Virus record (IMG/VR): IMGVR_UViG_3300032236_000747 | Coordinates: 248,001-312,000 of that record | Length of the DNA: 64,000 bases | Strand: one strand, 5' to 3' | Shown here: positions 17,578 through 31,881 of the stretch, piece by piece | Layout: every line of letters starts with the position of its first letter | Numbering within the stretch: position 1 is the first letter of the stretch | Notes under the pieces: model-generated | Told to the model about the DNA's origin: nothing | Database searches by the model: none | What the model saw: the letters and a program-made list of their open reading frames with translations, nothing else | Translations under genes and position numbers: made by a program

Positions 17578-18039
17578 ATGATAACCTTAGAGGAATTCCA
17601 CTCTTTTATTGAAAACGATATAGTATATCTCCAGAACTTACTATACTACATTGATGCTCAAGGGCAAGAGCATAAAATCAACAACCTGGGTCATCTTCAT
17701 TCCTTGTACGGGAATACCATAAAACTAGAAGGTGCCGAGAAATACAATAAAGCTCTCTTTGACTATTGTCAATCTTTCAAACACTCGGGTCCAGTAACTT
17801 GCCACATCTTTAGATCCTTCGCAGGCTCACATAGTTTTCCAACCCATGTAGATCCAGATGATGTACACCTTAGGTTGCTATATGGACAGAAAACTATTAT
17901 ACTAGAAGATACAGAACATATTTTGAATCCCAACGACTGCTTATACATACCTGCCAATACTCCCCATCGTGCAATAAACAACGAAGAGTCTTTGATGTTA
18001 AGCATAGGACTTGAAAAGTTTCTTATTGATAAACTATGA
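17578..18039 (+). CDS. Cupin / JmjC-like oxygenase
   Basis: SFPTHVDPDDV...GQK...L.PNDCLYIPANTPHRA. Confidence 0.8.
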   Translation: MITLEEFHSFIENDIVYLQNLLYYIDAQGQEHKINNLGHLHSLYGNTIKLEGAEKYNKALFDYCQSFKHSGPVTCHIFRSFAGSHSFPTHVDPDDVHLRLLYGQKTIILEDTEHILNPNDCLYIPANTPHRAINNEESLMLSIGLEKFLIDKL

Positions 18040-19094
18040 ATTGGCTTTTCTATTTAAAAACTACAGAGACCTGTAATCTCAACTGTAAACATTGTTTCAC
18101 CAATGGAACCAGCGGAGCAAAGATCTATTGGAACAAAGAAAAAGTCAGTAAGTGGTTAAAGGATTTTAGAGAAGAAGTTGGTCCTGGGCATTCAGCTCAC
18201 TGTGAGTTTCATGGGGGAGAGCCATTCCTTGTTGATGTAGAAGAAATGAAACAAGTATACGATGAATGTAAAGACCTTTGGAATAATATGTCATGGGGTG
18301 TAACAACTAATCTCGTATTCAAACTATCTCCTTCTATCATAGAGTTTATTAAAGGGCCCTTAGACAATAGATTAGCTACGAGTTGGGATCCTGATATTAG
18401 ATTTGCTAATCCTAAACAGTATGACCTTTGGAGGAACAATGTTAGGACATTGATAAACGAAGGAGTTACTCTTAAATTGTTTGTCAGTGTTACAAAAGGC
18501 ACAGTTAAAATGAACCCCATTGATCTCTTAGAGTGGATTAGAGACCTGGGAGTGAAAGAAGTAAGTTTTGAGAGATTAACGCACAACGGTAGCGCAAACA
18601 AAAACCCTGATATATTTCCCAGCAACGTAGAACAAGATGCTTGGTTCCTTAGAATGCATCAACAGAGCGAACAGGCAAACGCTAGAACTTGGTTTAATAA
18701 CGAGTTTCTAGAAAATGTTTATACAAAGTTTGAATCCGGATTTAACAAAGCAGGAACTTTCTGCAGGGACTGTGAGGAAAAACTCTTTACGTTAAACGCA
18801 GATGGTTCTATTGCCGGATGCCCAAACAGTGCTCCGGAACAGTATTTCGGACATATAGATACTAGAATACACGATCTACTCAAAGACCCTGCTAGAATAA
18901 ACAACATAGCCTGTGAAAGATCTAGAGATCCTAGGTGTTATTCCTGTGATGTTTTTGAGTTTTGTGGAGGAGACTGCCATCAGTTATCCTGGGAAGACGA
19001 TCAGTGTGGTGCACCTAGAAGCTTGATGCAGTTGTTAGCAGGTATAAATACTCTAAGAAGTCAAAAGATCTTTAAAATAGAGGAAATTAAATGA
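18036..19094 (+). CDS. Radical SAM/SPASM peptide- or protein-maturase-like enzyme 1
   Basis: CNLNCKHC, FHGGEP, SPASM-type CRDC...GCP...C..C...CGGDC...C. Confidence 0.92.
   Translation: MNWLFYLKTTETCNLNCKHCFTNGTSGAKIYWNKEKVSKWLKDFREEVGPGHSAHCEFHGGEPFLVDVEEMKQVYDECKDLWNNMSWGVTTNLVFKLSPSIIEFIKGPLDNRLATSWDPDIRFANPKQYDLWRNNVRTLINEGVTLKLFVSVTKGTVKMNPIDLLEWIRDLGVKEVSFERLTHNGSANKNPDIFPSNVEQDAWFLRMHQQSEQANARTWFNNEFLENVYTKFESGFNKAGTFCRDCEEKLFTLNADGSIAGCPNSAPEQYFGHIDTRIHDLLKDPARINNIACERSRDPRCYSCDVFEFCGGDCHQLSWEDDQCGAPRSLMQLLAGINTLRSQKIFKIEEIK
19043..19050 (+). promoter_or_regulatory. T4-type late promoter TATAAATA upstream of the putative precursor
   Basis: Perfect consensus inside the 3' end of rSAM1, 40 nt before ATG 19091; SD GAGG present. 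Confidence 0.6.
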
Positions 19095-19750
19095 CAACGT
19101 TAAATAATCCGGTCACCTCCCAAAATATTGTTGATAGATTCTACGATTACGTAAACTATACAGCTAGTCAAGGAGTCACTTGGGGTAGTGATGTTATTCC
19201 AGCGGGCGATACTAGCCCAGTGAGCGGAGTTGCTGCATCAGTACCTATTATAGCCAGCACGGATTTTGCAGGGACAGTGGCCGCGGTTACTGATATTGCT
19301 ATTAACGGAGCAAGTATTGGATCATCCGGTGGTACTATTACAGCCTCTGACATTTGGTCGGTGCTGGTAAATGAAACAAGCAGAGAAACACATATTAGAT
19401 ATGTTCAAGCAATTTGCGGAGTAACGGGCACTGGTGGAAATGCTGGTACAAGATTGAGAAACACAACCACTAACAGTGATCCTAATCGTGTTCAAGACGT
19501 ATATAATCTTACAAGGGTAGCTAATATGAGGGCAGGTTTTGCAAGTGGCATAACCAATCCAGCTGCTTCAACCTACTCATTAACCGCTGGAAGTACTATT
19601 AGTTCAACTAACCTTGAATCTTTTTTCAGTGCTTGTCGAGACGCTTATAATAACGCTGCTAGAGCCACTGGATCAGCATATGTATATCGTACTAATGTAT
19701 GCCACGCTAGTTGCCACTCTAGTTGTCATAGTTCAAGAGGAAGAAGATGA
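19091..19750 (+). CDS. Putative modification substrate: Thr/Ser/Gly-rich structural-like protein with C-terminal (CHxS)3-RGRR core
   Basis: Ends NVCHASCHSSCHSSRGRR; embedded among rSAM genes; body has a fibre-like GxTIxxxxI/L motif twice. Confidence 0.7.
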   Translation: MTTLNNPVTSQNIVDRFYDYVNYTASQGVTWGSDVIPAGDTSPVSGVAASVPIIASTDFAGTVAAVTDIAINGASIGSSGGTITASDIWSVLVNETSRETHIRYVQAICGVTGTGGNAGTRLRNTTTNSDPNRVQDVYNLTRVANMRAGFASGITNPAASTYSLTAGSTISSTNLESFFSACRDAYNNAARATGSAYVYRTNVCHASCHSSCHSSRGRR

Positions 19751-20436
19751 ACATCATCGAAACAACAGCACCTATTTCTATAGATAATTTAAAGAAGTAT
19801 TTTGAAGATAAAGAAACTGTCTTTTTAATCGATTATGATAACTCTAATCTTAAAGAAGAAAAACTATTAACTTATCTTAGCAATCTAGAAATACCCTGCG
19901 ACCTAAACATAACAGACAATGATTATCTCTTACCGTTGATAACCTGTTATTTAAAATCTCCACATATGGTAGAAATCCCGTTTCTTGAAAGAATAACAAT
20001 TATTCTTCTCTTGCAACATAAAGGCATTTTAGAAAAACAAGATCTTACTATGTTAGAGTCTTTTAAAGAACTATTAGATCTATGGTGTGAAAGATTAGAT
20101 TCTCTAACATTATATAACTTATATTGTGTTAATGAAGACAATGATTATTTTAAAAACTGGGTATTAGAAACCGGTATAAAGGATGACACAACTGATATGT
20201 CAGGTTGTAACTTTGTTAATCTTTTAAAATATGAAGATTTCTATCGATTCTATCAAAAGAGCAGTTCGACTCCTAAATATTTTCCCTACTACTTTGACGA
20301 GTATGTATTCAAAGGGAAAAACTTATACAGTTATTGGGCCAACAATAACAACCCTATGTTTCTTTTAACATTTGGAATAGCTTCCGGTGTATTTGAACAA
20401 TTCAAGGAAAATTTAAATGCTACACCTATTCAATAA
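19747..20436 (+). CDS. Hypothetical protein in the rSAM cluster
   Basis: Translationally coupled ORF. Confidence 0.8.
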   Translation: MNIIETTAPISIDNLKKYFEDKETVFLIDYDNSNLKEEKLLTYLSNLEIPCDLNITDNDYLLPLITCYLKSPHMVEIPFLERITIILLLQHKGILEKQDLTMLESFKELLDLWCERLDSLTLYNLYCVNEDNDYFKNWVLETGIKDDTTDMSGCNFVNLLKYEDFYRFYQKSSSTPKYFPYYFDEYVFKGKNLYSYWANNNNPMFLLTFGIASGVFEQFKENLNATPIQ

Positions 20437-21520
20437 AGTCTATCTTGCTAGTGATTATACACTATGGAATATTCATGCTGACAAAATATTAATAATATCA
20501 GATCATTATGCCACTGAAGATACAAAAGGATATCAAGGATCTACCTATGTAGGTAAAAGTTTATCAGATGCTTTTGGAGAGAAAACACTGCATGATGTTT
20601 TATCAGAGTTTGCCGCAGGCACTGATAAAGTTATTATCTATGCCGATAACATAAGTTTTGCTGAAATCGCTGCTTCGTGGTTTAAGTCGATTACGCACAT
20701 GGATCAAACAGCCTACGATACATTTGTTGACTGTTATATCTATAAAAGGTCTGTTACTGGGCAAGATGTTGGTCAACTATCTGTTTTAATGAAACAACAG
20801 TTAGAGTCAGCACCGGCATATGATTTTTCTAATATAGCAGTTGATATGCCCTATGAGTTTTTATTAGCATCTGCTTTGGTCAATAGAGACTTTTCTAAGA
20901 AATCTCAGTTTTTAAAAACACAAGCTAAGTTTGTTAAGAGATCATATGAACACCTTATTCTAGAAGCACGCAGGCATTTGGACAACTATATATTAGATGC
21001 TAATTTACAAACAGCTCTAGGGGGCTCTGGTAAAACAATACAAAACTACAAAGAACTACCAAGCCTAGCTGCTTATAAAGAACCTTATTTTAAAGAAGCT
21101 GTTCCTGGGCCAGTAGTTCATAGCTATATTCCCGGACAAGGATCTAAGATCGATATTAGCCAAGGGTCTGATAGCGATATTGATGACCTATGCAGGGTTA
21201 CAAATATCATAAACGTTTCTATAGCAGGTATGACTATTTCAACAGGGCCCAATGGACCGGTTGTTTCTTCTAGTCCATATACAAACAACCTAAGAGCCGA
21301 TGATGGTAATGGTTGGAAATATCTAGCAGCAGCTAGAAGAGGCGAGCTAACCTCTGAAGAGTCTGATGCATTGTTAACTGAGTTCTTAGAACCTAGAGTG
21401 GCATTTGAGTTAGTCCCATTGGATCTATCACAAACTATTGTCATGGTACTACTCCCTTATTTTAAATCTCTTGCTAATAGCGGAAACACTACTGAGCTCA
21501 CTAAGTTTACACTAAAATAA
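20417..21520 (+). CDS. Accessory protein A, paralog of 26608..27714
   Basis: MLHLFNKVYL...KVIIYAD...EFLLA shared with the paralog. Confidence 0.8.
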   Translation: MLHLFNKVYLASDYTLWNIHADKILIISDHYATEDTKGYQGSTYVGKSLSDAFGEKTLHDVLSEFAAGTDKVIIYADNISFAEIAASWFKSITHMDQTAYDTFVDCYIYKRSVTGQDVGQLSVLMKQQLESAPAYDFSNIAVDMPYEFLLASALVNRDFSKKSQFLKTQAKFVKRSYEHLILEARRHLDNYILDANLQTALGGSGKTIQNYKELPSLAAYKEPYFKEAVPGPVVHSYIPGQGSKIDISQGSDSDIDDLCRVTNIINVSIAGMTISTGPNGPVVSSSPYTNNLRADDGNGWKYLAAARRGELTSEESDALLTEFLEPRVAFELVPLDLSQTIVMVLLPYFKSLANSGNTTELTKFTLK

Positions 21521-21521
21521 T

Positions 21522-22550
21522 ATGTCCTTGTATGATGTAATAGACAGGAAGGTCATAGACTATGCTGAGATTGTTGTCTGTTTATTTGATCATTGTAATC
21601 TACGCTGTGCTTTTTGTCCACAACATCACGATGATTTATTAGGTGCCTCTAGGGATGAAATATTAGCCAAGGTTCCGGGCATTGTTAACTGGATTAATAA
21701 TAATACTAGATCAAAGTATTTTAAAATTCATATAATGGGCGGCGAAGTATTTGAAGATATCTTCATAGAACAAGGCTTTATTGAAATCTATCAGGATTTT
21801 ATAGATCAAATAAAAAATAGTGTTCCAAAAGAAAAACACGTTGAAATAAACTTTATAACAAACTTAGTTTTTCAAAAACATCAAACAGTTTTAGATTTTC
21901 TTAATATCAATAACCTAAAAGTTTCAACATCTTACGATCCTCGTGGTCGATTTACTGCTCAACAGTTTGAAACATTTAAAAATAACATAGAGATATTTAA
22001 AGACTATATTAGTATGTTTTCTGTAGTAACTACTAGACAAAACATTGAAGCAGTTATAAAAGGCGATAGTTATTTTGATTATCTATATCAAAACTTTGTT
22101 TGTGATTGGGATTCATTTATACCAGCAATAGCAGAAACAGCCGAAGCAATGATGCCTAGTGAACAAGAGTTATTAAACTTTTATAAACATCTCGTTGACC
22201 ATTATCCGGACTGTATTAATATAGAGTATTTTACTGGTAATGAAAAAGAAAATCACATGAGCTGCACAAGGGGAAACAGTTATACTATTCTAAGAGATGG
22301 TTCTATGCCCGGTGGATGCAGTGGTGCGGTGTTTCTTAAAGATGCTGAAACAAAAAACTTAGAATCAACTATCATATTACATAAGTTTTTTGATACCTAT
22401 GATTGTTTCTCGTGTGAGTATTTTAAGAAATGTCCTTTTACCTGTTTTATAAAAAATGACTACAAAAAAATTAAACGAGATCTCGGAAGCTGTGTTTTTA
22501 AAGAAACCTTTCGATACGTCGATTCAAAACATAAAAGTATCATTCATTAA
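21522..22550 (+). CDS. Radical SAM enzyme 2 with Cys-rich C-terminal domain
   Basis: CNLRCAFC, MGGE, CTRG...GGC...CFSCEYFKKCPFTC. Confidence 0.9.
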   Translation: MSLYDVIDRKVIDYAEIVVCLFDHCNLRCAFCPQHHDDLLGASRDEILAKVPGIVNWINNNTRSKYFKIHIMGGEVFEDIFIEQGFIEIYQDFIDQIKNSVPKEKHVEINFITNLVFQKHQTVLDFLNINNLKVSTSYDPRGRFTAQQFETFKNNIEIFKDYISMFSVVTTRQNIEAVIKGDSYFDYLYQNFVCDWDSFIPAIAETAEAMMPSEQELLNFYKHLVDHYPDCINIEYFTGNEKENHMSCTRGNSYTILRDGSMPGGCSGAVFLKDAETKNLESTIILHKFFDTYDCFSCEYFKKCPFTCFIKNDYKKIKRDLGSCVFKETFRYVDSKHKSIIH

Positions 22551-24255
22551 TCCACCTCACGCCGATTGGTGTTTGGCAAACAATGCTGCTTACTTAATGT
22601 TTCAATCGCATTACAGCAGACACGGCAAAAATAATAAAAAGGTAGAGTGGATACCGGCTCCTTATCGATTTGATCAGTATGAAAATGTTCAACAAATATT
22701 AAACGAAGTTGGGAAAGCTGATGTGTATCTATTTTCTAGTTACATATGGAACTATGATGTATGTGATAGTCTCGCCAGACTAATCAAAGATACCTATCCT
22801 ACAAGCATCTGCGTATTAGGTGGCCCGCAAATAGGAACTAACGAACCAAAGTTCTTAACATCTCGTTCTATGTATGATTATATACTGCGACCAACCAAAC
22901 CCGGTGAAGTATTTGTACAAGAACTTATTGATTCGTATTTCGATAACTTAGGATATCCTGATGTAGAAGATATTTCCTGGGAACTACGTAGCGATAAAAA
23001 ATGCGATCAGTTTATGCCAGATTATAGTGTGTACGAAGAACATATAGAATATCTAACCAATGCTAGAGAACATGCTCGTGAAAATGATCTAGAACCATTT
23101 TGTATTATTGAAACAACTCGAGGATGTCCTTATGCGTGTACCTATTGCGAATGGGGCGGAGGAATAGACAGTAAAATCTATAAGAAGCCTATTGATGTAG
23201 TAAAGCGTGATTTATTAGCATTAAAGAAAGCAGGCTATCGAGATGTTTACCTGACAGATGCTAACTTCGGAGCATTTAAAGATAGGGACTTAGAAATATT
23301 TAAGTTTGCGTGGGACAATGAAATAAATCTAACTGACATCAGTACTATGAAAAGCAAGGATTTGAAAAGAAGAACAGATCTAGTCGATGCATGGTTTAGC
23401 GTTGTAGGATCCGGGCCAGAAAAACACAGCCCTGTTATAACAGGAAGAGAAGGCGGACAAGCTCTTGTTGCCGGACTAGGTGAAATGTCAGCTTTATCAA
23501 ACGATGTTTCTTATATTAGTATTGTACCAACAGTATCTATTCAAAGTATCAGCGATGAAGCTATGAAAGTAGCTAAACGTGCTGACCTATCCTTTCAAGA
23601 TAAAATAAAACTCAGCGAGCATATAAACAATCAGTGCCACAAAGAAGGATATCCTGTTCCTGCTATTGAGTTAATAATGGGAATGCCAGGCAGTACTATT
23701 GATGATTTCTATGCTGAATGGGAAATAATGTGGAACTTCAAAGCATGGACTAGTTATCGACACGATTATATGTTCTTGCCTGACTCCGAGTTAACTAATC
23801 CAGAATATTTAAAAAAGTATGATATTACTCTAGTAGAAGTTTACAGTGATCTAGTAGACGAGTTTGGTATTGATAATCAAAATAGTCTTTATAAAAATAA
23901 ACGTAGTTATTTTAAAACTATATCGTCTTGCTTCTCTTATACATTCGACGAAATGTGTGAAATGTGGTTCATGAATCTAGCTGAGAACAGACTATTAGAA
24001 AAAATATATCCAATGTTTGAAAATGATATTTTACCGAGCGAGTTTGGAAAAATGTGTTATCGAATATTATCTCAAACAGATGAGTTTGCTGTTATCCATA
24101 AACAAATACAAGACCTACTAGATCCAAATACATCTCCAAAAAATATCAAAAGATTGAATGGTAAACTAAGAAACTTTGCTATTGATGACCTCACTGATAA
24201 GTACAGAACTATCATTGTTTCTCAAATATACAAGGAGATGTTATGCATCAACTAA
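22456..24255 (+). CDS. Cobalamin-binding (class B-like) radical SAM enzyme; start uncertain
   Basis: B12 domain FSSYIWN...VLGGPQ; ETTRGCPYACTYC; DANFG; ELIMGMPG. Confidence 0.88.
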   Translation: MTTKKLNEISEAVFLKKPFDTSIQNIKVSFINPPHADWCLANNAAYLMFQSHYSRHGKNNKKVEWIPAPYRFDQYENVQQILNEVGKADVYLFSSYIWNYDVCDSLARLIKDTYPTSICVLGGPQIGTNEPKFLTSRSMYDYILRPTKPGEVFVQELIDSYFDNLGYPDVEDISWELRSDKKCDQFMPDYSVYEEHIEYLTNAREHARENDLEPFCIIETTRGCPYACTYCEWGGGIDSKIYKKPIDVVKRDLLALKKAGYRDVYLTDANFGAFKDRDLEIFKFAWDNEINLTDISTMKSKDLKRRTDLVDAWFSVVGSGPEKHSPVITGREGGQALVAGLGEMSALSNDVSYISIVPTVSIQSISDEAMKVAKRADLSFQDKIKLSEHINNQCHKEGYPVPAIELIMGMPGSTIDDFYAEWEIMWNFKAWTSYRHDYMFLPDSELTNPEYLKKYDITLVEVYSDLVDEFGIDNQNSLYKNKRSYFKTISSCFSYTFDEMCEMWFMNLAENRLLEKIYPMFENDILPSEFGKMCYRILSQTDEFAVIHKQIQDLLDPNTSPKNIKRLNGKLRNFAIDDLTDKYRTIIVSQIYKEMLCIN

Positions 24256-24749
24256 AAGAAAACATTTACAAATACGGATATCATCAACTATTTGAACCTA
24301 GTGCCCTTGATTTAATAAAAGCAGACGAGTTTCGTTTACTCAATGTAGAAGAGCGCAGTAGAGATAATATGATAAAAGATGTACCAACAGAGTTATCAAA
24401 TAGATTAACTACAGTTGCTCATTATTTTAAAACCAAATATATAGATCCTGTATGGGAGAACTCTAGATACAATAAATTTACTATCTGGGAAGGTGTTGAT
24501 CGTGACAACCAAGGATGGCATACTGATTTCTTTGAAGGTTATGATTTATTCTTTCTCTACTACCTTGATGACACATTTGAAGAATCTGGAGGGTATATTG
24601 AGTTTAAATGGGACAGCGGCGAAAAACGTTATCAACCAAAAGCAGGAGATCTGTTTTTAGTTAACAACCTACGTGGCTTCTGGCATCGTGCTGGCAGTTC
24701 TACTATATCTCGTCGTGTAGCAAGTTTTGATTTTAACGCAGGTATCTAA
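24243..24749 (+). CDS. Fe(II)/2-oxoglutarate oxygenase
   Basis: WHTD...GG...P.AGD...WHRA...RRV. Confidence 0.8.
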   Translation: MHQLKENIYKYGYHQLFEPSALDLIKADEFRLLNVEERSRDNMIKDVPTELSNRLTTVAHYFKTKYIDPVWENSRYNKFTIWEGVDRDNQGWHTDFFEGYDLFFLYYLDDTFEESGGYIEFKWDSGEKRYQPKAGDLFLVNNLRGFWHRAGSSTISRRVASFDFNAGI

Positions 24750-24750
24750 A

Positions 24751-25056
24751 ATGCAACAAGTTATTAATGATCTATTAGAAAAGAAGAAAATCCTAGGAGA
24801 TGAAAGAGACCTATGCGCTGAAGTTTATAATGTGTGGATTACTAGGATGTACGAGTGCCAGGACGATCCTGTTAAGTATGAAATGTATATAAACATGATA
24901 CAGGTTATGGAACCATATGGCCAAATGGTTAAAGAGGAAATAAGAGAAATAAATCGTCAGCTTTGTGAAATAGAAGGTGTAGATTCTATAGACGAAACTC
25001 CTTATCTTAGAGAATGCAACAACAAGTATGGAAACGCAAAACCAAACGATATCTGA
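24751..25056 (+). CDS. Small helical hypothetical protein
   Basis: ATG at 24751 directly after the upstream stop. Confidence 0.75.
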   Translation: MQQVINDLLEKKKILGDERDLCAEVYNVWITRMYECQDDPVKYEMYINMIQVMEPYGQMVKEEIREINRQLCEIEGVDSIDETPYLRECNNKYGNAKPNDI

Positions 25057-25552
25057 TATTGGCAACGATTTTCTTATTAATGGATTTGCTACCGGTCTAG
25101 TTCCTCTTGATTTATTAACTCCGTTTAATAACACATATTTTCCTGATTGTAATATAGACTGTGATTATGTGTTTCCGGAAGAAGTTATAAATTTATTAAC
25201 ACCTGTGTGCGATTGGTTAAAAATAAACTATCTAGAAACATTGTTTGCTGACTATAGAGTACATTACATAGGAGCATGGAGTGGAGTCGATGAAGGCTCA
25301 GCAAGATGGCACAACGACTGGATTGATGGCGACCCATTTAATACAAACATTCTTGTATATCTAGATCCTCCATTAGAAAACTATATAGCAGTTAGAAATA
25401 TACTTGATCCGGACAGCGAAACTAAGATATATCCAGAAGTTGGGCAGTTTGTTTGGATCAATCAACAAAAACACATACAACACAAAGCACAACATACTGC
25501 TGGCCCTAGAAGATTATTGTGCTTTGAATTCTTCGTACCTAACCTAACCTAA
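25028..25552 (+). CDS. Fe(II)/2-oxoglutarate oxygenase, paralog of 24243..24749
   Basis: W.GVD...WHND...LVYLD...QHKA...RR. Confidence 0.8.
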   Translation: METQNQTISDIGNDFLINGFATGLVPLDLLTPFNNTYFPDCNIDCDYVFPEEVINLLTPVCDWLKINYLETLFADYRVHYIGAWSGVDEGSARWHNDWIDGDPFNTNILVYLDPPLENYIAVRNILDPDSETKIYPEVGQFVWINQQKHIQHKAQHTAGPRRLLCFEFFVPNLT

Positions 25553-25556: not shown

Positions 25557-26648
25557 ATGGATCTTATCATTAAACCTACAGAAGTATGTAACTTCAAATG
25601 TACATTTTGTTCATCTACAAAAATCAGTGAAGAACATAGTTCAACACTAGACTTAGATTACGTGTTTAAGTTTCTAAAAAGATTTCCGGAAACTAATACA
25701 ATAATAGTCAATGGTGGAGATCCATTGATGATGCCTGTTAACTATTATTGGGAGATTATTAACTGGCTAGATCAACACAACTACGATCACACTACTCTTA
25801 GTCTTACAACTAATCTTTGGCCATTTTATAAAAATCCAGATAAATGGATTGAGCTATTCAAACATCCAAGGGTTGGCGTTAGTACATCGTTCCAATATGG
25901 TAACGGCCGTCTTAAAGGCAACTATGAAGTCTTTACAGAAGATGACTTTTGGGCAGCATCGAATATGATGCTAGATAAAATAGGTTATCGACCTACCTTC
26001 ATTGCTGTTATCACAGAAGAAAACGAAGACAGCATTATTAAAACAGTAGAGCTTGCTAAGAAGATGGATGTTGTTTGTAAAGTAAATTACGGAATGGCAT
26101 CCGGAGACCAGTCAACTCCATATATGTTATCAAAGATATATAAGGCCTATATAGATATATGGAAGGCGGGACTTTATCCCTGGGAACATAATACGCAGCA
26201 GATGATGACTCGATTAAAAGGAACAGCGACAATCTGCCCACAGGCCCGAAACTGTGATTCGCATATAAGAACACTTCAACCAGAAGGAGATTACTATTCC
26301 TGCGGTGCATTCGGCGACGACAAGGAAAAACCTATTAACTTTGAAGAAGAAATGAGTGGTAAGTTTTTTACACCGTTGTCTGATGACTTTGACATTGCTA
26401 CAATGAAACAATCCTGTTATACTTGTGCTATGTTTGAAATCTGTAATGGTTGCAGAAAAACCGTTAAAGATCAAAAGAGACACGGAATGGTAGAAGAACA
26501 TTGTAAGATGATGAAGTCTCTCGCTCCTGATATAATAACAGCCAATGGAGTTGTTAGGGAAGTTACCCCTTATGTTAAAGAAAGCAATCAAAGAATAATA
26601 AGGATAGTTGATGATACATTTGTTCAACCAAGTTTACCTATCTTATGA
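25557..26648 (+). CDS. Radical SAM/SPASM enzyme 4
   Basis: IIKPTEVCNFKCTFC, NGGDP, CP...C...YSC...CYTC..FEICNGC...C. Confidence 0.92.
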   Translation: MDLIIKPTEVCNFKCTFCSSTKISEEHSSTLDLDYVFKFLKRFPETNTIIVNGGDPLMMPVNYYWEIINWLDQHNYDHTTLSLTTNLWPFYKNPDKWIELFKHPRVGVSTSFQYGNGRLKGNYEVFTEDDFWAASNMMLDKIGYRPTFIAVITEENEDSIIKTVELAKKMDVVCKVNYGMASGDQSTPYMLSKIYKAYIDIWKAGLYPWEHNTQQMMTRLKGTATICPQARNCDSHIRTLQPEGDYYSCGAFGDDKEKPINFEEEMSGKFFTPLSDDFDIATMKQSCYTCAMFEICNGCRKTVKDQKRHGMVEEHCKMMKSLAPDIITANGVVREVTPYVKESNQRIIRIVDDTFVQPSLPIL

Positions 26649-27714
26649 TAATATCATAGATGAAAACATTGATAGAGTAGTAATATCAGAAGAGTTTGGT
26701 AAACATATGTTGCAGTATGCCGCTAGGCCTTCCCACGGGGCATTGTTGTATGCTGGCATGGATATTAATGACCTAGCAACAAATGGTATTAGTGATTTCT
26801 TTAACAACCTAGCAACGCATAAAAATAAAGTTGTTATCTATGCTAGTAGAGATTCGTTCTTAGAAATATTAGTGTTATGGTTTACTTCTCTATTAAAACA
26901 TGCCGACAAAGATACAGTACAAACATTGTGTAAGGCTTTGATCTTTAGGATAGTTGTGTTTTCAAATGGAAGATTTATCACACGCAGCGATAAAAACAAA
27001 ACTGAATATTCGCCGCAATACTACGAGTTCCCACAGGCCGACTTTGATTCATACTATAAGCTAGCACTTGAGTCTAACTTAGATCTAGCACCATTTCTAA
27101 ATAACATAGGTGTTGAGTATATGCTAGCAACATATCTTTACAGCGGTCATTATAAAGAAGAACTTAAATCTTTATTAAAACCCTTGATAAGAAAAGATAT
27201 GATAAAATATCTCTACGAGCTCAAAGAGATATTTCTTGTACATTTAATGACTCCTGCCTTTACAAATAAGATGTCATTAACTAAAGATTATGATTTTAAT
27301 ACATTTACTGATATTATAAATGATGATTCTAGATTTGCTAAAACATTCATGTCTACTCAAATATGGGAAACTCCTTTTATGTCAGCATATGGAAACCATG
27401 ATATCTTTTTAGAAAATATAACTCCAGAAGATATTCAAGTGTTTAAAGACTTTACTCATATTGCTGGAAACACATGGATAGAAGAAAGTGTTTATATATT
27501 TGTTAAATCAGATATTAATAAACTAGACTTTCTAGCTTGTTTTTTAGATTTTACAGATGATCTACTCGATAAGATTATAGAGGCTGAATCAACATTTGAG
27601 CACTCAGCTGGATCTTTCTTTTCTATAGACGTGACTACTGTTAATCATTATCTTGTACAAGGTCTTTTAAAAAATAGAAACAATAAAGAATATCTAAGAT
27701 TGTATTCAATATGA
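26608..27714 (+). CDS. Accessory protein B, paralog of 20417..21520
   Basis: MIHLFNQVYL...KVVIYAS...EYMLA. Confidence 0.8.
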   Translation: MMIHLFNQVYLSYDNIIDENIDRVVISEEFGKHMLQYAARPSHGALLYAGMDINDLATNGISDFFNNLATHKNKVVIYASRDSFLEILVLWFTSLLKHADKDTVQTLCKALIFRIVVFSNGRFITRSDKNKTEYSPQYYEFPQADFDSYYKLALESNLDLAPFLNNIGVEYMLATYLYSGHYKEELKSLLKPLIRKDMIKYLYELKEIFLVHLMTPAFTNKMSLTKDYDFNTFTDIINDDSRFAKTFMSTQIWETPFMSAYGNHDIFLENITPEDIQVFKDFTHIAGNTWIEESVYIFVKSDINKLDFLACFLDFTDDLLDKIIEAESTFEHSAGSFFSIDVTTVNHYLVQGLLKNRNNKEYLRLYSI

Positions 27715-28643
27715 ACATTTCTATTAACCCTTGGTACTACTGTAACTTTCGCTGCGATTTTTGTTATCTAACCACGCAACAGTTATCAGATAAGCAGTTA
27801 CTAGATCTCGATGTACTAGAAACACGTCTAAGAGAAATACCCTCTCCTATTGATCAGGTAGATCTATACGGGGGTGAGATAGGTCTTCTTCCTAAAGAGT
27901 ATTTTCAAAGACTCAAAGAAATCTGTAAAAGATACACTGATAAAATAAACATTATTACAAACTTATCTACAGTAAACAGCATTACCACAGATGAAGATTG
28001 CTATATATCAGTTAGCTATGATTTTGACTGTAGGGAAAATCACGAAATAGTTTTTAAAAATATGATGCTATTAGAAAGACCATTTTCTATTTTAATGCTA
28101 GCTGGAGATAAACTAATAGAGAAAGATGTTAGCCATATGATTAATATGTTTAATCTTATAGGAAACTTGGAATCAGTTGAGATTAAACCTTACAGTAGCA
28201 ACCAAGCTAATCAACAAACGGTTACTTTTAAACAGTTTGAAGATTTTATAATAAAATGGATTGATAGCCCTATTAAGAAAAACTTTTCTTTTATAAACGA
28301 GTTCCTAATAGAAGATGTATTAGATAAAACTAGAAACAGTTTTTCCGATGATCACATTTACATAACTCCTAGTGGTAGATATGCTGTTTTAGAATTTGAT
28401 TTAAATGACAATGAGTTCTTTCTTGAATATGATACATTTCAGGACTACCTAAACTGGTGTTCGATTGAAAAGAAACGAACACACAAGAACTCCTATTGTA
28501 ATCAATGCGAGTATAACGGTCATTGTCTATCTGAACACCTGAGAGATGTCAAAGATCTAAATAATAGTTGTAACGGATTTAAACATCTGATAGATTGGTA
28601 TAAGAATGAAAGACTGGAAGATTCGACAAGAAGTTTATCATAA
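27711..28643 (+). CDS. Radical SAM enzyme 5
   Basis: CNFRCDFC, LYGGE, CNQCEYNGHC...SCNG. Confidence 0.9.
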   Translation: MNISINPWYYCNFRCDFCYLTTQQLSDKQLLDLDVLETRLREIPSPIDQVDLYGGEIGLLPKEYFQRLKEICKRYTDKINIITNLSTVNSITTDEDCYISVSYDFDCRENHEIVFKNMMLLERPFSILMLAGDKLIEKDVSHMINMFNLIGNLESVEIKPYSSNQANQQTVTFKQFEDFIIKWIDSPIKKNFSFINEFLIEDVLDKTRNSFSDDHIYITPSGRYAVLEFDLNDNEFFLEYDTFQDYLNWCSIEKKRTHKNSYCNQCEYNGHCLSEHLRDVKDLNNSCNGFKHLIDWYKNERLEDSTRSLS

Positions 28644-29010
28644 ACTAAATCGTTCACACACGGATGATTTAAACTCAGTTGATATAATAAACACTACCGA
28701 AACAGTAAAAGATGCTGTAAGATATTTTCACGAAACAAACATTGGATGGATATATCCTTCAAAGAGTTATATGGTTGCTATATGTTATGCTAGATGGCTA
28801 GGCGAAAACTTCGGCGGTGATCCTTACGAATATCTAAATGATCCTGATTTGCTTTATGGAAACGATCCTTATTTTATTCCCTATAGAGAATCAAAAAAAG
28901 AATACGATCAAATTTTGATTGATATTAATGGTTGGCAGTTTTCCGAAACTTCAGGTATGGTGCCCGATGTTAAACAATATTTCCTAGAGGAGTTCATGAT
29001 AGATGTATGA
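28606..29010 (+). CDS. Hypothetical protein in the rSAM cluster
   Basis: Overlapping operon ORF. Confidence 0.8.
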   Translation: MKDWKIRQEVYHKLNRSHTDDLNSVDIINTTETVKDAVRYFHETNIGWIYPSKSYMVAICYARWLGENFGGDPYEYLNDPDLLYGNDPYFIPYRESKKEYDQILIDINGWQFSETSGMVPDVKQYFLEEFMIDV

Positions 29011-29629
29011 TGATTTACACAGCCCTTCGGGCAAGGGCAATAGCTGGGGCACTGGCAATAAACTAACCAACGGAGTTAACTTACTGTGGCCTAATCAAGT
29101 TCTATCCGGTAATATAGAAGAAAAGGATTTGTTAGATAAGTTTTCTCAAACTATATTCGAATCTGTAGATTTTTCATCTAATAGATTTTCGGAGTTTGAT
29201 CCGTTAATAGAAGGTCCAGAGATTTGTCAAGAGTTTAAAAATAAAGTTGTTGTGCCCTGCTTTGAAAAGTATCTTAACAACATGGGGCTAAATCTACAAT
29301 CCTTTGGAAACTATAGACTTAAATCTTGGATAACCGGATCAAAAGAAGGATACTCAATATCAGCACACAATCATAGCGGTGCTAGTTTAAGTGCTGTGTT
29401 TTATCTTTTAGTAGGGAATAGAGTAACCGGAGGGGACCTTGTAATAATAGACCCTAGGACCAATGCTAACCGAGGATACCTAGATGCATTTAAACCATTT
29501 TTTGAAAATAAGGTCTTTACACCGCAGTCTGGGGAATATATAATCATACCCGGATATCTTTATCATCATACTACTACATTTTATGGATCACTGAGGCTTG
29601 CTATGCCGGTAGATTTGTTTTTGAGTTAA
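29003..29629 (+). CDS. Putative Fe(II)/2OG oxygenase, phage type
   Basis: HNH...LSAVFYL...DPR...PGYLYH...R. Confidence 0.8.
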   Translation: MYDDLHSPSGKGNSWGTGNKLTNGVNLLWPNQVLSGNIEEKDLLDKFSQTIFESVDFSSNRFSEFDPLIEGPEICQEFKNKVVVPCFEKYLNNMGLNLQSFGNYRLKSWITGSKEGYSISAHNHSGASLSAVFYLLVGNRVTGGDLVIIDPRTNANRGYLDAFKPFFENKVFTPQSGEYIIIPGYLYHHTTTFYGSLRLAMPVDLFLS

Positions 29630-29955
29630 ACTCTAAAACTTTCGCCGCAGCCACAACGGTCGCGTTCATTAGGATTTCTAAACTCAAACCCTTCATTTAA
29701 TCCATTTCGAACATAATCTACAGTTGTTCCTAAAATATATGGAAGGTGTCTGGTGTAAATCTTGATTATGAAATCCGGATAGATAATGCGCTCTTCACTA
29801 GGGTCAAAGGAATCTGGATAGTTTAACCATTCTAAAGTATAAGCTAAACCACTACACCCTGTAGTTTTAACTCCTATCCTAAGTCCTACACTAGCTCCTC
29901 GTTTTATTTTCAACTGTTTAATCTTGTCTAGGGCTTGCTCTGTTAGTGTGATCAT
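29626..29955 (-). CDS. iscA: Fe-S cluster assembly A-type carrier IscA
   Basis: GVKTTGCSGLAY...GLNEGFEFRNPN...CGCGESF. Confidence 0.93.
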   Translation of the reverse strand: MITLTEQALDKIKQLKIKRGASVGLRIGVKTTGCSGLAYTLEWLNYPDSFDPSEERIIYPDFIIKIYTRHLPYILGTTVDYVRNGLNEGFEFRNPNERDRCGCGESFRV

Positions 29956-30288: not shown

Positions 30289-30420
30289 ATGAAACTACGT
30301 AAACTAAGAAAAAAGATGTACAAGGCTATATTCAATCATGATGTAGCAAAAGAAAGAAAAACTTGGCTCAAGATTCTTAAAAAATCTATGAAGCACAAAC
30401 ACACCGCAGACGTTCAATAA
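30289..30420 (+). CDS. Small basic protein (43 aa, MKLRKLRKKMYKAIF...)
   Basis: Manual translation; fills the gap, stop overlaps the iscU start. Confidence 0.6.
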   Translation: MKLRKLRKKMYKAIFNHDVAKERKTWLKILKKSMKHKHTADVQ

Positions 30421-30803
30421 TGGCATATTCGGATAAAGTAATAGATCATTACGAGAATCCTAGAAATGTAGGAAAGTTTGACATCGACGATAGTATAGGC
30501 ACGGGCATGGTCGGAGCTCCTTCTTGCGGTGATGTTATGAAACTACAAATCAAAGTAAATGAAGAAGGTATCATTGAAGATGCAAGATTTAAAACATATG
30601 GATGCGGTTCAGCAATCGCATCAAGCTCACTTATCACAGAGCTTGTCAAAGGAATGTCTCTTGACCAGGCGACAGCTATTAAAAACAGCGACATCGCCGA
30701 GGAGTTGGCTCTTCCACCTGTTAAGATTCACTGCTCAATCCTCGCAGAAGACGCAATCAAAGCAGCAGTAATAGATTATAAAAAGAAGAATAATCTGTTG
30801 TGA
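30420..30803 (+). CDS. iscU: Fe-S scaffold IscU
   Basis: YSDKVIDHYENPRNVG, APSCGDVM, GCGSA, LPPVKIHCS. Confidence 0.96.
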   Translation: MAYSDKVIDHYENPRNVGKFDIDDSIGTGMVGAPSCGDVMKLQIKVNEEGIIEDARFKTYGCGSAIASSSLITELVKGMSLDQATAIKNSDIAEELALPPVKIHCSILAEDAIKAAVIDYKKKNNLL

Positions 30804-30811
30804 TCTAACTT

Positions 30812-31552
30812 ATGTTTCAATCAATTTTTCCACCTGCAATAGTTAGAGAACATAGACAAGAAAAACCCAGCAAAGTTTCTAGTGCTAGATTTAGTAATGA
30901 TGAAATACTGGGAAGAGCACTGTTTAGGTCAACTAATAAGTTGAAAGGGAAAGACGGAAGAACATACAACTACATAGATAAAAATGGGGAATATGTTAGT
31001 TCTAGGATTAGCCCTTATAGCCCTTATATAGATGATAATATAGAACCCGGTGTATACGATATAGTTAAATCATTATTAAACAAAGGATACTTAACTGTTA
31101 GTAGTTGTCAAGGACATAGTGATAGGAAATTTAGATTTGTTACGGTTGCTTTTAAAACACAACAAAACTCTGATGAATTTAAAGATGTGTTGATTAACTC
31201 TAAAGTTCCACTACATTTTCAAAAAGTTTCCAAAAATACCGGCTTTTCATTTGTATATGATCAAAATAGATATAACGGTAAAGAACTAGCTGGTGAAGAA
31301 TACAGGAATGTCCCTTATTCTGAATCAGATCTTGTTAAATATCTTAACATAATGTTTTTAAGGAACTACTCCGAATATCATCTATTACAAGTAAGGATAG
31401 CATCTGAACCAGATATAGAGTCTGTAGGAATATTAAAATATATTTTATCAAAGCCATATTATTTTGTTCTATATCAGTTTAGAGATTATTTCACTAAAAA
31501 ACTAGTTTCTTACATTAATACGTACTTAAAAGATTATTCGGACAAACTATGA
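30812..31552 (+). CDS. Hypothetical protein with TYW3-like T.SSC.G motif
   Basis: [26 protein letters not shown]. Confidence 0.55.
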
Positions 31553-31881
31553 ATATTACAATTTCAGATTCTTGTGTATCAAAAATAAAAGACCTTCTTC
31601 TAGAAGAAAATAATCCTTTGTTGAATCTGCGTACATTTGTCCAGGGCGGTGGCTGTTCAGGAATGCAGTACGGATTTACCTTTGATGAAGAAATCAACGA
31701 AGATGATTTTATCTTAGAACAGTCCGGATTTAAAATATTAATAGATAGCATGAGCTATCAGTATCTTCAAGGATCTACCGTTGATTACAAAGAAGATCTA
31801 CAAGGTAGCCGGTTTGTTATTCAAAACCCAAATGCCCAAACAACCTGTGGTTGTGGCAGCTCGTTTAGTGTAGCAGAATAA
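31549..31881 (+). CDS. erpA: Fe-S insertion protein ErpA (A-type carrier)
   Basis: [21 protein letters not shown]...DSMSYQYL...[14 protein letters not shown]. Confidence 0.92.

What the first reader, a model, noticed from the sequence alone, without database searches (positions are those of the whole stretch)
17578..31881. Phage-encoded RiPP-like protein-modification system: five radical SAM enzymes, four oxygenases, a (CHxS)3 substrate and Fe-S supply genes
Seen: fifteen co-oriented, overlapping or abutting genes (17578-29629). They include four CxxxCxxC enzymes with Cys-rich SPASM-like tails, one B12-binding rSAM, one cupin/JmjC-like and three Fe(II)/2OG oxygenases, two paralogous accessory proteins and a protein ending CHASCHSSCHSSRGRR. 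iscA, iscU and erpA follow directly. Known: rSAM/SPASM enzymes mature RiPPs (ranthipeptides, triceptides, His-Xaa-Ser and CXXX-repeat systems), B12-rSAMs usually methylate carbon, and 2OG enzymes hydroxylate. Inference: the phage builds a heavily cross-linked, methylated and hydroxylated C-terminal peptide on one of its own proteins. I see no exporter or leader peptidase, which fits a modified virion or intracellular protein better than a secreted antibiotic. I know of no characterised system with this layout, but could not search.
Basis: partly seen in the sequence, partly recalled or inferred. Interest (0 to 1): 0.93.

Follow-up and report, generated by a model that had tools for sequence, protein, structure and literature searches.

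The report
Phage cassette remodelling a virion-protein tail
A large uncultured phage carries a virus-only block of radical SAM enzymes and oxygenases beside a protein with an invariant 16-residue Cys-His tail; the same block occurs in well over a hundred phage contigs and in known jumbo phages, and nobody has described what it does.

Summary
Window 17578-29629 carries 15 co-oriented genes: five radical SAM (rSAM) enzymes (two full SPASM, one partial, one twitch-like, one B12-binding), four cupin/2OG oxygenase-like proteins, orphan accessory proteins, and a 219-aa protein ending CHASCHSSCHSSRGRR.

The cassette is conserved, not a chance cluster. Loci seeded on an accessory gene alone all carry a gene ending CH..CH..CH..R.RR-stop (79/79). 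All 54 complete cassettes keep the same four core rSAMs in one order. It occurs in Ralstonia RSF1/RSL2, Burkholderia FLC6/FLC8/S13, Agrobacterium Atu_ph07, Sinorhizobium Phosso and Pseudomonas pPa_SNUABM_DT01. In 185,579 species genomes only four MAG contigs have it.

The Atu_ph07 homologue (gp170, 31.9 kDa) was found by published MS of a PEG-purified virion preparation, peaking in the top gel slice. A second architecture places two small tailed proteins directly after tail-fibre genes.

Best reading: a RiPP-like maturation system that rebuilds the C-terminal tail of a virion, probably tail-associated, protein. The chemistry is unknown.

The isc genes and the B12 enzyme are not core.

No accessible paper describes it. 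New variant of a known kind; high interest.

The parts
17578..18039 (+). Cupin-fold Fe(II) oxygenase-like protein (153 aa); first gene of the cassette
   Evidence: Pfam JmjC_2 4.1e-10 and Cupin_2 2.5e-9. H90/D92/H130 conserved in 73 homologues. Present in 75/80 loci. Nearest PDB sequences are only quercetinase and a weak Cupin-4 hit.
18036..19094 (+). rSAM1: radical SAM/SPASM enzyme (352 aa), always directly upstream of the tailed protein
   Evidence: Radical_SAM, Fer4_12 and SPASM (TIGR04085 1e-7). Full-length weak match to PapB (4.8e-15), far below its cut-off. CX3CX2C plus 8 invariant Cys. PDB hits: GDGT-MAS, CteB.
19091..19750 (+). Presumed substrate: 219-aa protein with invariant C-terminal tail CHASCHSSCHSSRGRR (tail = 19700-19747)
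   Evidence: AF2 pLDDT 85 with no PDB fold match. No Lys in the window protein. The Atu_ph07 homologue gp170 was detected in a virion preparation.
19747..20436 (+). Core accessory protein (229 aa; phrog_20767), no known domain
   Evidence: PHROG 1.1e-52. Present in 77/80 loci. No PDB profile hit.
20417..21520 (+). Accessory protein 'par' copy A (367 aa), in the canonical position
   Evidence: Paralogue of 26611-27714. Family motif M-x-H-L-F-N-K-V-Y-L.
21522..22550 (+). rSAM2: radical SAM enzyme with a partial SPASM-like Cys tail (342 aa)
   Evidence: Radical_SAM 1.6e-3. CX3CX2C plus 6 invariant Cys. No PDB sequence hit.
22456..24255 (+). B12-binding radical SAM enzyme (up to 599 aa; true start probably downstream of 22550); optional module
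   Evidence: B12-binding plus Radical_SAM. KedN5 subfamily 6.4e-26, below cut-off. Present in 31/80 loci.
24243..24749 (+). 2OG-Fe(II) oxygenase-like protein (168 aa); variable module
   Evidence: 2OG-FeII_Oxy_3 2.5e-5. Present in 43/80 loci.
24727..25056 (+). Small protein (109 aa) that accompanies the B12/2OG module
   Evidence: Homologues in 11 loci, always beside the 2OG paralogues.
25028..25552 (+). Second 2OG-oxygenase paralogue (174 aa)
   Evidence: BLASTP against 24243-24749: E 5e-16, with a shared WH-x-D ... H motif.
25557..26648 (+). rSAM3: radical SAM/SPASM enzyme (363 aa), the most conserved cassette protein
   Evidence: Radical_SAM 3.8e-11 over the full domain. DynA 5.9e-15 and anSME 3.4e-14, both below cut-offs. 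CX3CX2C plus 9 invariant Cys, and 59-75% identity across loci. PDB hits: anSME, SuiB.
26611..27714 (+). Accessory protein 'par' copy B (367 aa)
   Evidence: AF2 pLDDT 83 with no PDB fold match.
27711..28643 (+). rSAM4: radical SAM enzyme with a twitch-like 4-Cys tail (310 aa)
   Evidence: Radical_SAM 3.5e-8. CX3CX2C plus 4 invariant Cys. No PDB sequence hit.
28606..29010 (+). Core accessory protein (134 aa; phrog_20737)
   Evidence: PHROG 1.7e-56. Present in 56/80 loci. No PDB hit.
29003..29629 (+). 2OG-Fe(II) oxygenase (208 aa, PF13759/TIGR02466-like); usual last gene of the cassette
   Evidence: 2OG-FeII_Oxy_5 1.3e-9. Conserved H122/H124/D150/H188. Present in 58/80 loci.
29626..29955 (-). 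IscA-type A-type Fe-S carrier, on the opposite strand
   Evidence: TIGR02011 1.3e-31 and TIGR00049 91 bits, above its cut-off.
30420..30803 (+). IscU Fe-S scaffold
   Evidence: TIGR01999 216 bits, above its cut-off of 192. 75-83% identical to gammaproteobacterial-type IscU found in a few phage records.
30812..31552 (+). 246-aa protein of a family that recurs inside other cassettes (invariant C-x-G-H)
   Evidence: Homologues in 13 other loci, placed between cassette genes. No Pfam or PDB hit.
31549..31881 (+). ErpA Fe-S insertion protein
   Evidence: NF010147 173 bits, above its cut-off of 117.

Best explanation
This is one copy of a conserved, virus-restricted protein-maturation cassette.

Core genes, in order: cupin oxygenase, SPASM rSAM1, tailed protein, 229-aa accessory protein, about 367-aa accessory protein, rSAM2, SPASM rSAM3, rSAM4, 134-aa accessory protein, 2OG oxygenase. 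Optional genes are a B12-rSAM and extra 2OG paralogues.

Proposed mechanism (inferred, not shown):
- The tailed protein is the substrate.
- Its last ~55 residues (helix, strand, then the 16-residue tail C-H-x-S-C-H-x-x-C-H-x-x-R-x-R-R) are recognised by the enzymes, perhaps with help from the orphan accessory proteins.
- The four rSAM enzymes each perform a distinct radical reaction on the Cys/His/Ser residues. By analogy with their nearest relatives these could be thioether or C-C cross-links, or Cys/Ser oxidation to formylglycine.
- The Fe(II)/2OG enzymes then hydroxylate or oxidise further.
- In some lineages, including this one, a B12-rSAM adds a methyl group.

The matured protein is built into the virion, most likely in the tail, baseplate or fibre region. 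There the rebuilt tail would act as a rigid, protease-proof, metal-binding or covalently cross-linking end.

The iscA, iscU and erpA genes are a private addition of this phage. They would help load the roughly 11-12 [4Fe-4S] clusters that the five rSAM enzymes need.
For: Shown by tool results:
- Gene content and active-site residues.
- Fixed synteny in about 80 loci, and exactly four core rSAMs in 54/54 complete cassettes.
- The tail is present in 79/79 loci retrieved through the 229-aa accessory gene alone.
- The tail is invariant while its codons vary freely. Ser at tail position 4 (the first-repeat Ser) uses all six codons in 92 distinct tail DNA sequences.
- 130 of 145 divergent family representatives end in the exact tail.
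- In 185,579 species genomes, only four MAG contigs carry it.
- rSAM1 and rSAM3 align over their full length to peptide/protein SPASM maturases.
- The same tail module is attached to different N-terminal domains. Only the last ~56 columns align between the two classes, at 99% hhalign probability.
- In class II loci, two tailed proteins follow tail-fibre genes after gaps of 0-4 nt.
- In RSF1, Atu_ph07 and this window the cassette lies among baseplate, fibre and lectin genes.

From the literature:
- Atu_ph07 gp170 (31.89 kDa, identity confirmed) was detected in a virion preparation with 8 peptides and 35% coverage.
- It was most abundant in gel slice 1, alongside proteins of 75-139 kDa.
- None of the cassette enzymes was listed (PMC6102473 Table S5).
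Against: - No mass-spectrometric or structural evidence of any modification exists.
- The Atu_ph07 stock was only PEG-purified, and its list includes obvious non-structural proteins (RecA-like, SSB, RNR). Virion association is therefore suggestive, not proven.
- RSF1 ORF071 is annotated only as hypothetical, while neighbouring genes are called virion structural proteins.
- rSAM2 and rSAM4 match only generic rSAM cores.
- No RRE, leader peptidase or other hallmark RiPP helper was detected. The accessory proteins have no recognisable fold.
- Radical SAM enzymes are oxygen-sensitive and the oxygenases need O2, so the order and compatibility of the steps are unexplained.
- A perfect sigma-70 consensus promoter upstream would suit early rather than late expression.
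Confidence: 0.6

Rival explanations
1. The tailed protein is a scaffold or carrier, not an end product. A small molecule or metallocofactor would be assembled on its Cys/His tail by the rSAM and oxygenase enzymes and then released or handed on. Known parallels are carrier or scaffold proteins such as HydF, NifEN and LysW, and peptide-derived cofactors such as PQQ and mycofactocin.
For: - Four different rSAM enzymes plus oxygenases is more chemistry than most RiPP tails receive.
- PQQ and mycofactocin also start from the C-terminus of a ribosomal peptide and use SPASM enzymes (established knowledge).
- Fe-S genes lie next to the cassette in this window.
Against: - The Atu_ph07 homologue was recovered from a virion preparation with good coverage, while the enzymes were not.
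- The tail module is fused to different N-domains and sits after tail-fibre genes.
- No peptidase or transporter is present.
Confidence: 0.12
2. The Cys-His tail is simply a metal-binding or Fe-S-binding end of a structural protein, as in metal-capped tail spikes or the Fe-S cluster of lambda gpL. On this view the neighbouring enzymes modify something else, such as another virion protein, a cell-envelope component or a nucleotide.
For: - Three Cys-His pairs are a plausible metal site.
- The phage carries isc genes.
- rSAM2 and rSAM4 give no substrate clue.
Against: - The tail gene co-occurs with the cassette in 100% of loci, and rSAM1 is always immediately adjacent to it.
- Ser and Arg positions in the tail are invariant, which metal binding alone would not require.
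- The isc genes are absent next to every other cassette.
Confidence: 0.12
3. It is a phage counterpart of the bacterial HXS defence system. An rSAM-matured His-x-Ser effector would bind DNA through its basic tail. The phage could use it to exclude superinfecting phages, to escort its own DNA, or to counter HXS.
For: - HxsA is an rSAM-matured protein with HxS repeats. A +8 Da change on its SHRSS motif is needed for it to block DNA entry (PMC13128918).
- The phage tail repeats [C]-H-x-S and ends in R-G-R-R.
- HxsB and HxsC models give weak hits.
Against: - All Hxs model scores are far below their cut-offs, and no HxsD match was found.
- The phage protein has no signal peptide and no peptidoglycan-binding domain.
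- Gene order and gene number differ.
- No specific PADLOC hit was found.
Confidence: 0.08
4. The cassette is a DNA or nucleotide hypermodification pathway, and the tailed protein is an unrelated neighbour or a DNA-binding helper.
For: - Phage thymidine hypermodification pathways include rSAM enzymes (PMC8989533, listed).
- In RSF1-like phages, dihydrofolate reductase genes are inserted within the cassette.
Against: - No kinase, glycosylase, PLP enzyme, hydroxymethylase or other base-modification gene is conserved with the cassette.
- The best-placed rSAMs resemble protein maturases.
- The tail gene is invariably present.
Confidence: 0.05

Closest known systems
His-Xaa-Ser (HXS, HxsABCD) antiphage system of Pseudomonadota
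   Same: - Two or more rSAM enzymes plus a small helper protein mature a full-size protein rather than a short peptide.
- That protein carries tandem H-x-S repeats.
- The modified HxsA motif S-H-R-S-S resembles C-H-x-S-C.
- Both have a basic tail region.
   Different: - HXS is cellular, has four genes in the order D-B-C-A, and its effector is exported and anchored to peptidoglycan.
- The cassette here is viral, with at least ten genes, four to six rSAMs plus oxygenases, and Cys before every His.
- The motif here sits at the extreme C-terminus and the protein has no signal peptide.
- All Hxs models score far below their cut-offs.
Ranthipeptide/sactipeptide-type SPASM maturases (PapB, CteB) and CXXX-repeat systems
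   Same: - rSAM1 aligns over its full length to PapB and has a full SPASM Cys set.
- The substrate has Cys at a regular four-residue spacing, as in Cys-X3 repeat precursors.
   Different: - Scores are 55.6 bits against a cut-off of 340 for PapB, and 22.9 against 350 for the CXXX-repeat maturase.
- The substrate is a 120-300 aa folded protein with no acidic acceptor residues.
- There is no leader, peptidase or exporter.
- Four distinct rSAMs are present rather than one.
Anaerobic sulfatase-maturating enzyme (anSME)
   Same: - rSAM3 and rSAM1 hit the anSME model and its PDB entries.
- anSME also acts on a full-size protein, oxidising Cys or Ser.
- The third repeat, C-H-x-x-R, has Arg at +4, as in the sulfatase C-x-P/A-x-R motif.
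   Different: - There is no sulfatase domain.
- Position +2 of the motif is Gly, Ser or Asn rather than Pro or Ala.
- Scores are far below the cut-off: 52.7 against 349.
QhpD/QhpC of quinohemoprotein amine dehydrogenase, and PQQ/mycofactocin-type peptide-derived cofactors
   Same: - A SPASM enzyme installs several cross-links in a Cys-rich ribosomal protein or peptide.
- Further oxidative enzymes finish the product.
   Different: - There is only a weak hit to QhpD (1.4e-5).
- There is no dehydrogenase partner.
- The product appears to stay on a virion protein.

Membership tests
His-Xaa-Ser system (HxsABCD) | HxsB and HxsC equivalog models reached (TIGR03978 cut-off 370 bits; TIGR03977 cut-off 267.9 bits) | tested here: not met
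   Best scores were 29.2 bits (rSAM1 against HxsB) and 26.1 bits (rSAM3 against HxsC).
His-Xaa-Ser system (HxsABCD) | HxsA effector with tandem HxS repeats, an N-terminal export signal and a peptidoglycan-binding domain; HxsD helper protein | tested here: not met
   H-x-S units are present. There is no signal peptide and no PG-binding domain, and no HxsA or HxsD model hit at E <= 0.1.
His-Xaa-Ser system (HxsABCD) | Chromosomal four-gene operon D-B-C-A in Pseudomonadota | tested here: not met
   The cassette is viral with at least ten genes in a different order. Only four MAG contigs carry it among 185,579 species genomes.
Ranthipeptide (PapB family) | PapB equivalog score of at least 340 bits; short precursor with Cys-X3-Asp/Glu motifs | tested here: not met
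   The score is 55.6 bits. The tail has no Asp or Glu.
CXXX-repeat peptide system (TIGR04115 maturase) | Maturase equivalog score of at least 350 bits, with a small CXXX-repeat peptide | tested here: not met
   The score is 22.9 bits. The substrate is a protein of 120-300 aa.
Anaerobic sulfatase maturase (anSME) | TIGR03942 score of at least 349 bits; sulfatase substrate with C/S-x-P/A-x-R | tested here: not met
   Scores are 52.7 and 41.2 bits. No sulfatase gene is present. Only the Arg at +4 of the third repeat fits the motif.
Radical SAM / SPASM superfamily | CX3CX2C SAM-cluster motif plus a C-terminal 7-8 Cys auxiliary-cluster domain | tested here: met
   rSAM1 and rSAM3 have SPASM TIGR04085 hits and 8-9 invariant extra Cys. 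rSAM2 has 6 and rSAM4 has 4.
RiPP pathway in the strict sense | Leader/core precursor, a recognition element (RRE), leader removal and release of a peptide product | tested here: inconclusive
   No RRE, peptidase or exporter was detected. The conserved helix-strand segment ahead of the tail could serve as a recognition element. Whether the tail is released cannot be tested with these tools.
Virion structural protein | Detected in purified particles | not testable with these tools
   The only evidence is from the literature. Atu_ph07 gp170 was found in a PEG-purified stock with 8 peptides and 35% coverage, peaking in gel slice 1 (PMC6102473). Nothing is known for the window phage.

The most novel reading that the evidence does not exclude
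The four rSAM enzymes and the oxygenases convert the Cys-His tail into a reactive or cross-linked 'staple'. This could be formylglycine aldehydes or inter-chain thioether or C-C bonds. The staple would covalently lock the protein into tail-fibre or baseplate assemblies, or onto a host receptor. Two observations would then be explained: the Atu_ph07 protein runs at the top of an SDS gel after boiling, and the family is nearly free of lysine. If true, this would be the first enzymatically installed radical-SAM modification of a virus particle.
Probability: 0.25. Interest if true: 0.92.

Novelty: new variant of a known kind. Interest (0 to 1): 0.85.

Why it matters
Radical SAM maturation of ribosomal peptides and proteins is known from bacteria. 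Examples are RiPP antibiotics, cofactors, sulfatases and, recently, the HXS defence effector.

Here the same enzymology is found as a large, strictly conserved and virus-only cassette.
- It is present in at least 150 IMG/VR contigs.
- It is present in cultured jumbo phages of Ralstonia, Burkholderia, Agrobacterium, Sinorhizobium and Pseudomonas.
- Its target appears to be a component of the virus particle.

This would add a new class of post-translational chemistry to phage structural biology. It offers four unassigned rSAM enzymes and three orphan accessory folds acting on a defined 16-residue substrate. It is also directly testable, because several carrier phages are in culture. Finally, it gives a rationale for the rare phage-encoded isc genes.

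Tried and rejected
- **DNA search of phage records.** Megablast of the whole region against 50,697 phage records gave no match.
- **tblastn with the tailed protein.** No match, probably because of low-complexity masking. Homologues were reached through the 229-aa accessory protein and rSAM3 instead.
- **Fold searches.** The tailed protein (pLDDT 85) and the ~367-aa accessory protein (pLDDT 83) gave nothing significant in the PDB. The viral library returned only the tailed protein's own family.
- **Profile searches against PDB sequences.** Profiles of the 229-aa, 367-aa, 134-aa and 246-aa families found nothing. Pfam scans of the 246-aa family members also found nothing.
- **PADLOC.** Only generic viperin-core hits.
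- **Tail residues versus B12-rSAM presence.** No correlation.
- **Phage lineage and host.** The ligase gave only distant hits and a 525-aa neighbour gave none.
- **Cupin as a ribosomal-oxygenase-like Arg/His hydroxylase.** The Pfam JmjC_2 hit is real, but the nearest solved sequences are quercetinases, and the Cupin-4 hit is only E 0.054. I kept this only as a weak lead.
- **Literature.** No paper mentions the tail motif or discusses the cassette beyond listing annotations.
- **PhiRP12/RP31 rSAM cluster.** It has a different layout and was not counted as the same cassette.

Full report

Yes. Between 17578 and 29629 there are 15 + strand ORFs, each overlapping or abutting the next.

Radical SAM (rSAM) enzymes (Pfam and NCBIfam):
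- There are five rSAM proteins.
- rSAM1 (18036-19094) and rSAM3 (25557-26648) carry SPASM domains.
- rSAM2 (21522-22550) and rSAM4 (27711-28643) have shorter Cys-rich tails.
- 22456-24255 has a B12-binding domain and is closest to the KedN5 C-methyltransferase subfamily.
- Across 58-76 homologues, the CX3CX2C motif is 100% conserved. So are 8, 6, 9 and 4 further Cys in rSAM1 to rSAM4 respectively. That implies roughly 11-12 [4Fe-4S] clusters for the five enzymes together.

Oxygenase-like proteins:
- 17578-18039 is a cupin with a conserved H/D/H triad.
- 24243-24749 and 29003-29629 are 2OG-Fe(II) oxygenase-like.
- 25028-25552 has no Pfam hit but is a paralogue of 24243-24749 (E 5e-16).

Other points:
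- The two ~367-aa accessory proteins are paralogues (E 1e-11).
- The 219-aa protein ends in CHASCHSSCHSSRGRR-stop.

- iscA is on the minus strand.
- Two more genes sit among the isc genes.
- The long ORF of the B12 enzyme overlaps rSAM2 by 95 nt, so it probably starts later.

**2. It is a conserved cassette, not a local accident.**

The window belongs to a 354,680-bp IMG/VR contig.

Homologues in cultured phages:
- Homologues of the 229-aa accessory protein and of rSAM3 occur in the same 15 deposited records.
- These represent about 12 phages: Ralstonia RSF1, RSL2, RsoM3USA and three FLC4 isolates; Burkholderia FLC6, FLC8 and S13; Agrobacterium Atu_ph07; Sinorhizobium Phosso; and Pseudomonas pPa_SNUABM_DT01.
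- In RSF1, Atu_ph07 and pPa_SNUABM_DT01, the gene after the first rSAM ends in CHSSCHSSCHGSRGRR, CHSSCHASCHNSRSRR and CHTSCHTSCHSARGRR respectively.

Survey of IMG/VR:
- A scan seeded on the tailed protein found 153 related loci.
- In the 80 that were fetched, the order is fixed: cupin, rSAM1, tailed protein, 229-aa protein, ~367-aa protein, rSAM2, (B12-rSAM), (2OG paralogues), rSAM3, rSAM4, 134-aa protein, 2OG oxygenase.
- All 54 complete cassettes have exactly the four core rSAMs.
- That scan used the tail itself as a search pattern, so I repeated it with the 229-aa accessory protein. All 79 loci found this way carry an ORF ending CH..CH..CH..R.RR-stop on the same strand.

Selection on the tail and size of the family:
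- Codons in the tail vary freely. Ser at the fourth tail position (the first-repeat Ser) uses all six codons of both Ser codon boxes across 92 distinct tail DNA sequences. Selection is therefore on the peptide.
- An exhaustive HMM search found 679 representatives at the 50% identity level. Of 145 newly listed ones, 130 end in the exact tail.
- Variants appear only at the edge of the family: four CH repeats, a one-residue insertion, or a different ending.
- In one genome for each of 185,579 bacterial and archaeal species, only four MAG contigs carry the gene. The system is essentially viral.

**3. What can be said about the parts.**

- rSAM1 aligns end to end with PapB. rSAM3 aligns with DynA and anSME. 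Their nearest solved sequences are GDGT-MAS/CteB and anSME/SuiB.
- All scores are far below the family cut-offs. These enzymes resemble peptide/protein-modifying SPASM enzymes without belonging to any named family.
- They do not group with QueE, NrdG or MoaA. The MoaA, NrdG and viperin hits cover only the N-terminal SAM-cluster region.
- rSAM2 and rSAM4 cannot be placed.
- The tailed protein folds confidently (pLDDT 85, pTM 0.81) into an alpha/beta domain with no match in the PDB. In the viral structure library only its own relatives match, including the Atu_ph07 protein.
- The ~367-aa accessory protein (pLDDT 83) also has no match.
- Profiles of the 229-aa, 134-aa and 246-aa families find nothing.
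- No peptidase, RRE or exporter is seen.

**4. Where the product goes.**

Published virion proteomics of Atu_ph07 (PMC6102473, Table S5):
- gp170 is listed at 31.89 kDa with 8 unique peptides and 35% coverage, in gel slices 1 to 9 and most abundant in slice 1.
- I confirmed that gp170 is the tailed homologue. The translated gene gives 296 aa and 31.89 kDa.
- Among proteins with at least four peptides, it is the only one under 75 kDa that peaks in the top slice.
- None of the cassette enzymes (gp165-169, 171, 172) is listed.
- The authors place gp170 at the start of a cluster of virion genes, CDS 170-215.
- Caveat: the stock was only PEG-purified and the list includes clear contaminants.

Genomic position:
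- In RSF1 the cassette lies between baseplate genes and a concanavalin-like protein.
- In this window it lies upstream of lectin-like virion proteins, an Mtd_N tail fibre and a PA14/GLEYA protein.

A second architecture:
- A DNA-pattern scan for the tail found it in 21 of 80 loci, and it also occurs in L086.
- In most of these loci the layout starts with a tail-fibre gene of 355-2859 aa. The seven I scanned show tail-fibre PHROGs, collagen repeats or a weak Peptidase_G2 domain.
- Within 0-4 nt come two tandem proteins of ~127-140 aa with the same 16-residue tail.
- After them come a ~400-aa rSAM, ~367-aa and ~250-278-aa proteins, and three to five more rSAMs.
- Profile-profile comparison aligns only the last ~56 columns of the two classes, at 99% probability.
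- The portable unit is therefore a helix-strand-tail module that can sit on different N-terminal domains.

**5. Best explanation.**

The tailed protein is the substrate of the cassette, and its matured form is a virion component, probably tail-associated.

Shown:
- The gene content and conserved active-site residues.
- Obligate co-occurrence of the tail gene with the cassette, and selection on the tail peptide.
- Restriction to viruses.
- Linkage to structural and fibre genes.
- One proteomic detection in a virion preparation.

Inferred:
- That the tail is modified at all.
- What the modifications are.

By analogy, the SPASM enzymes would install thioether or carbon-carbon cross-links, or oxidise Cys or Ser. 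The oxygenases would hydroxylate. The optional B12 enzyme would methylate.

Two observations hint at covalent cross-linking or a reactive group, but neither proves it:
- The Atu_ph07 protein migrates at the top of the gel.
- The family is very poor in lysine. The median is 1.4%, 47 of 248 members have none, and the window protein has 0 of 219, while neighbouring proteins have 5-8%.

I put 0.6 on the core statement.

**6. The Fe-S genes.**

- iscA, iscU and erpA score as genuine family members, iscU and erpA above their equivalog cut-offs. None accompanies the cassette in any other fetched locus.
- IscU is rare in deposited phage records: 12 of 50,697, and several of those look like host DNA.
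- The 246-aa gene between iscU and erpA belongs to a family found inside 13 other cassettes. The isc genes are therefore interleaved with cassette-linked genes.
- The stretch from about 20 to 32 kb is a low-GC island (0.34-0.36, against 0.42-0.50 in the flanks).
- Two perfect sigma-70 consensus promoters (12 of 12 positions), at 15685 and 31888, bracket the longer run from 15797 to 31881.
- A lineage-specific add-on that supports the heavy Fe-S demand is a reasonable reading, but it is not part of the conserved system.

**7. Comparison with known systems.**

- The closest named analogue is the bacterial HXS defence system. There, HxsB and HxsC mature the HxS-repeat protein HxsA, and a +8 Da change on SHRSS is required for function (PMC13128918).
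- The resemblance: several rSAM enzymes act on H-x-S repeats in a full-size protein.
- Every membership feature that I could test fails: model scores, HxsD, signal peptide, gene order and host distribution.
- The same holds for PapB-type ranthipeptides, the CXXX-repeat system and anSME.
- Papers on the carrier phages only list the genes as cupin, radical SAM or 2OG annotations.
- No accessible paper contains the tail motif.

**8. Verdict.**

The cassette is a new, virus-specific variant of rSAM-dependent protein maturation with unknown chemistry and a probable virion target. It is of high interest because it is widespread, sharply defined and testable in cultured phages.

Noticed in passing
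window 20000-32000: Low-GC island (0.34-0.36) covering most of the cassette and the isc genes, against 0.42-0.50 in the flanks. This suggests the module was acquired from a lower-GC source.
   Followed up: no
window 15685-15713 (+) and 31888-31916 (+): Two perfect TTGACA-17-TATAAT sigma-70 consensus sites in intergenic positions. They bracket the run from the cell-wall hydrolase gene (15797) to erpA (31881). These are consensus matches only.
   Followed up: no
window 29994-30287 (+): A 97-aa ORF with a signal-peptide-like N-terminus followed by WHHHHCC, lying between iscA and iscU. It could be an exported metal-binding peptide. No family hit was found.
   Followed up: no
window 30812-31552 (+); L020, L023, L029, L030, L040, L041, L049, L055, L057, L058, L074, L080, L081: The 246-aa protein family has invariant G-R, S-P and C-x-G-H motifs and recurs between cassette genes in 13 other loci. 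It has no Pfam or PDB match.
   Followed up: partly
window 19091-19750; alignment A2; proteins P0001-P0265: The tailed protein family is strongly depleted in lysine. The window protein has 0 of 219, the family median is 1.4%, and 47 of 248 members have none. Arg is retained, and neighbouring proteins have 5-8% Lys.
   Followed up: partly
L086 614-11205; L168, L187, L195, L204, L212, L224, L226, L230, L233, L242-L244 and others: In a second architecture, two tandem ~127-140 aa proteins with the same 16-residue tail sit after a tail-fibre gene (within 0-4 nt wherever that gene lies in the fetched stretch). They are followed by a different set of up to six rSAM genes.
   Followed up: partly
proteins P0251, P0252, P0159, P0191, P0213, P0231: Tail variants at the edge of the family: four CH repeats ending in a Gly/Pro-rich extension, C-H-S-N-H-x-N-T-C-H forms, and a one-residue insertion before RGRR.
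   Followed up: no
window 30420-30803: The phage IscU is 75-83% identical to Acinetobacter/Salmonella-type IscU sequences found in a few phage records. This hints at a gammaproteobacterial host or donor.
   Followed up: no
L001 15602-16718 (RSF1 ORF077-078) and related FLC/S13 phages: Two dihydrofolate reductase genes and an HNH endonuclease gene are inserted in the middle of the cassette in the RSF1-like phages.
   Followed up: no
window 37216-43362 and 52279-59205 (+): Two very large ORFs of 2048 and 2308 aa lie in the structural region. The first has no Pfam hit. The second was not scanned.
   Followed up: no
window 8750-8826 (-), 9679-10266 (-), 12982-13932 (-): A tRNA-Met (CAT), an HNH endonuclease and a DNA methyltransferase lie upstream of the cassette.
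   Followed up: no
Genome-contig scan; viral-contig scan: Many more stretches matched a search pattern than encode a relative of the N-domain: 152 against 4 in genomes, and 281 against 153 in viral contigs. In the genome scan only one of the two patterns was a tail pattern. Some of the surplus are class II proteins, and the rest were not examined.
   Followed up: partly
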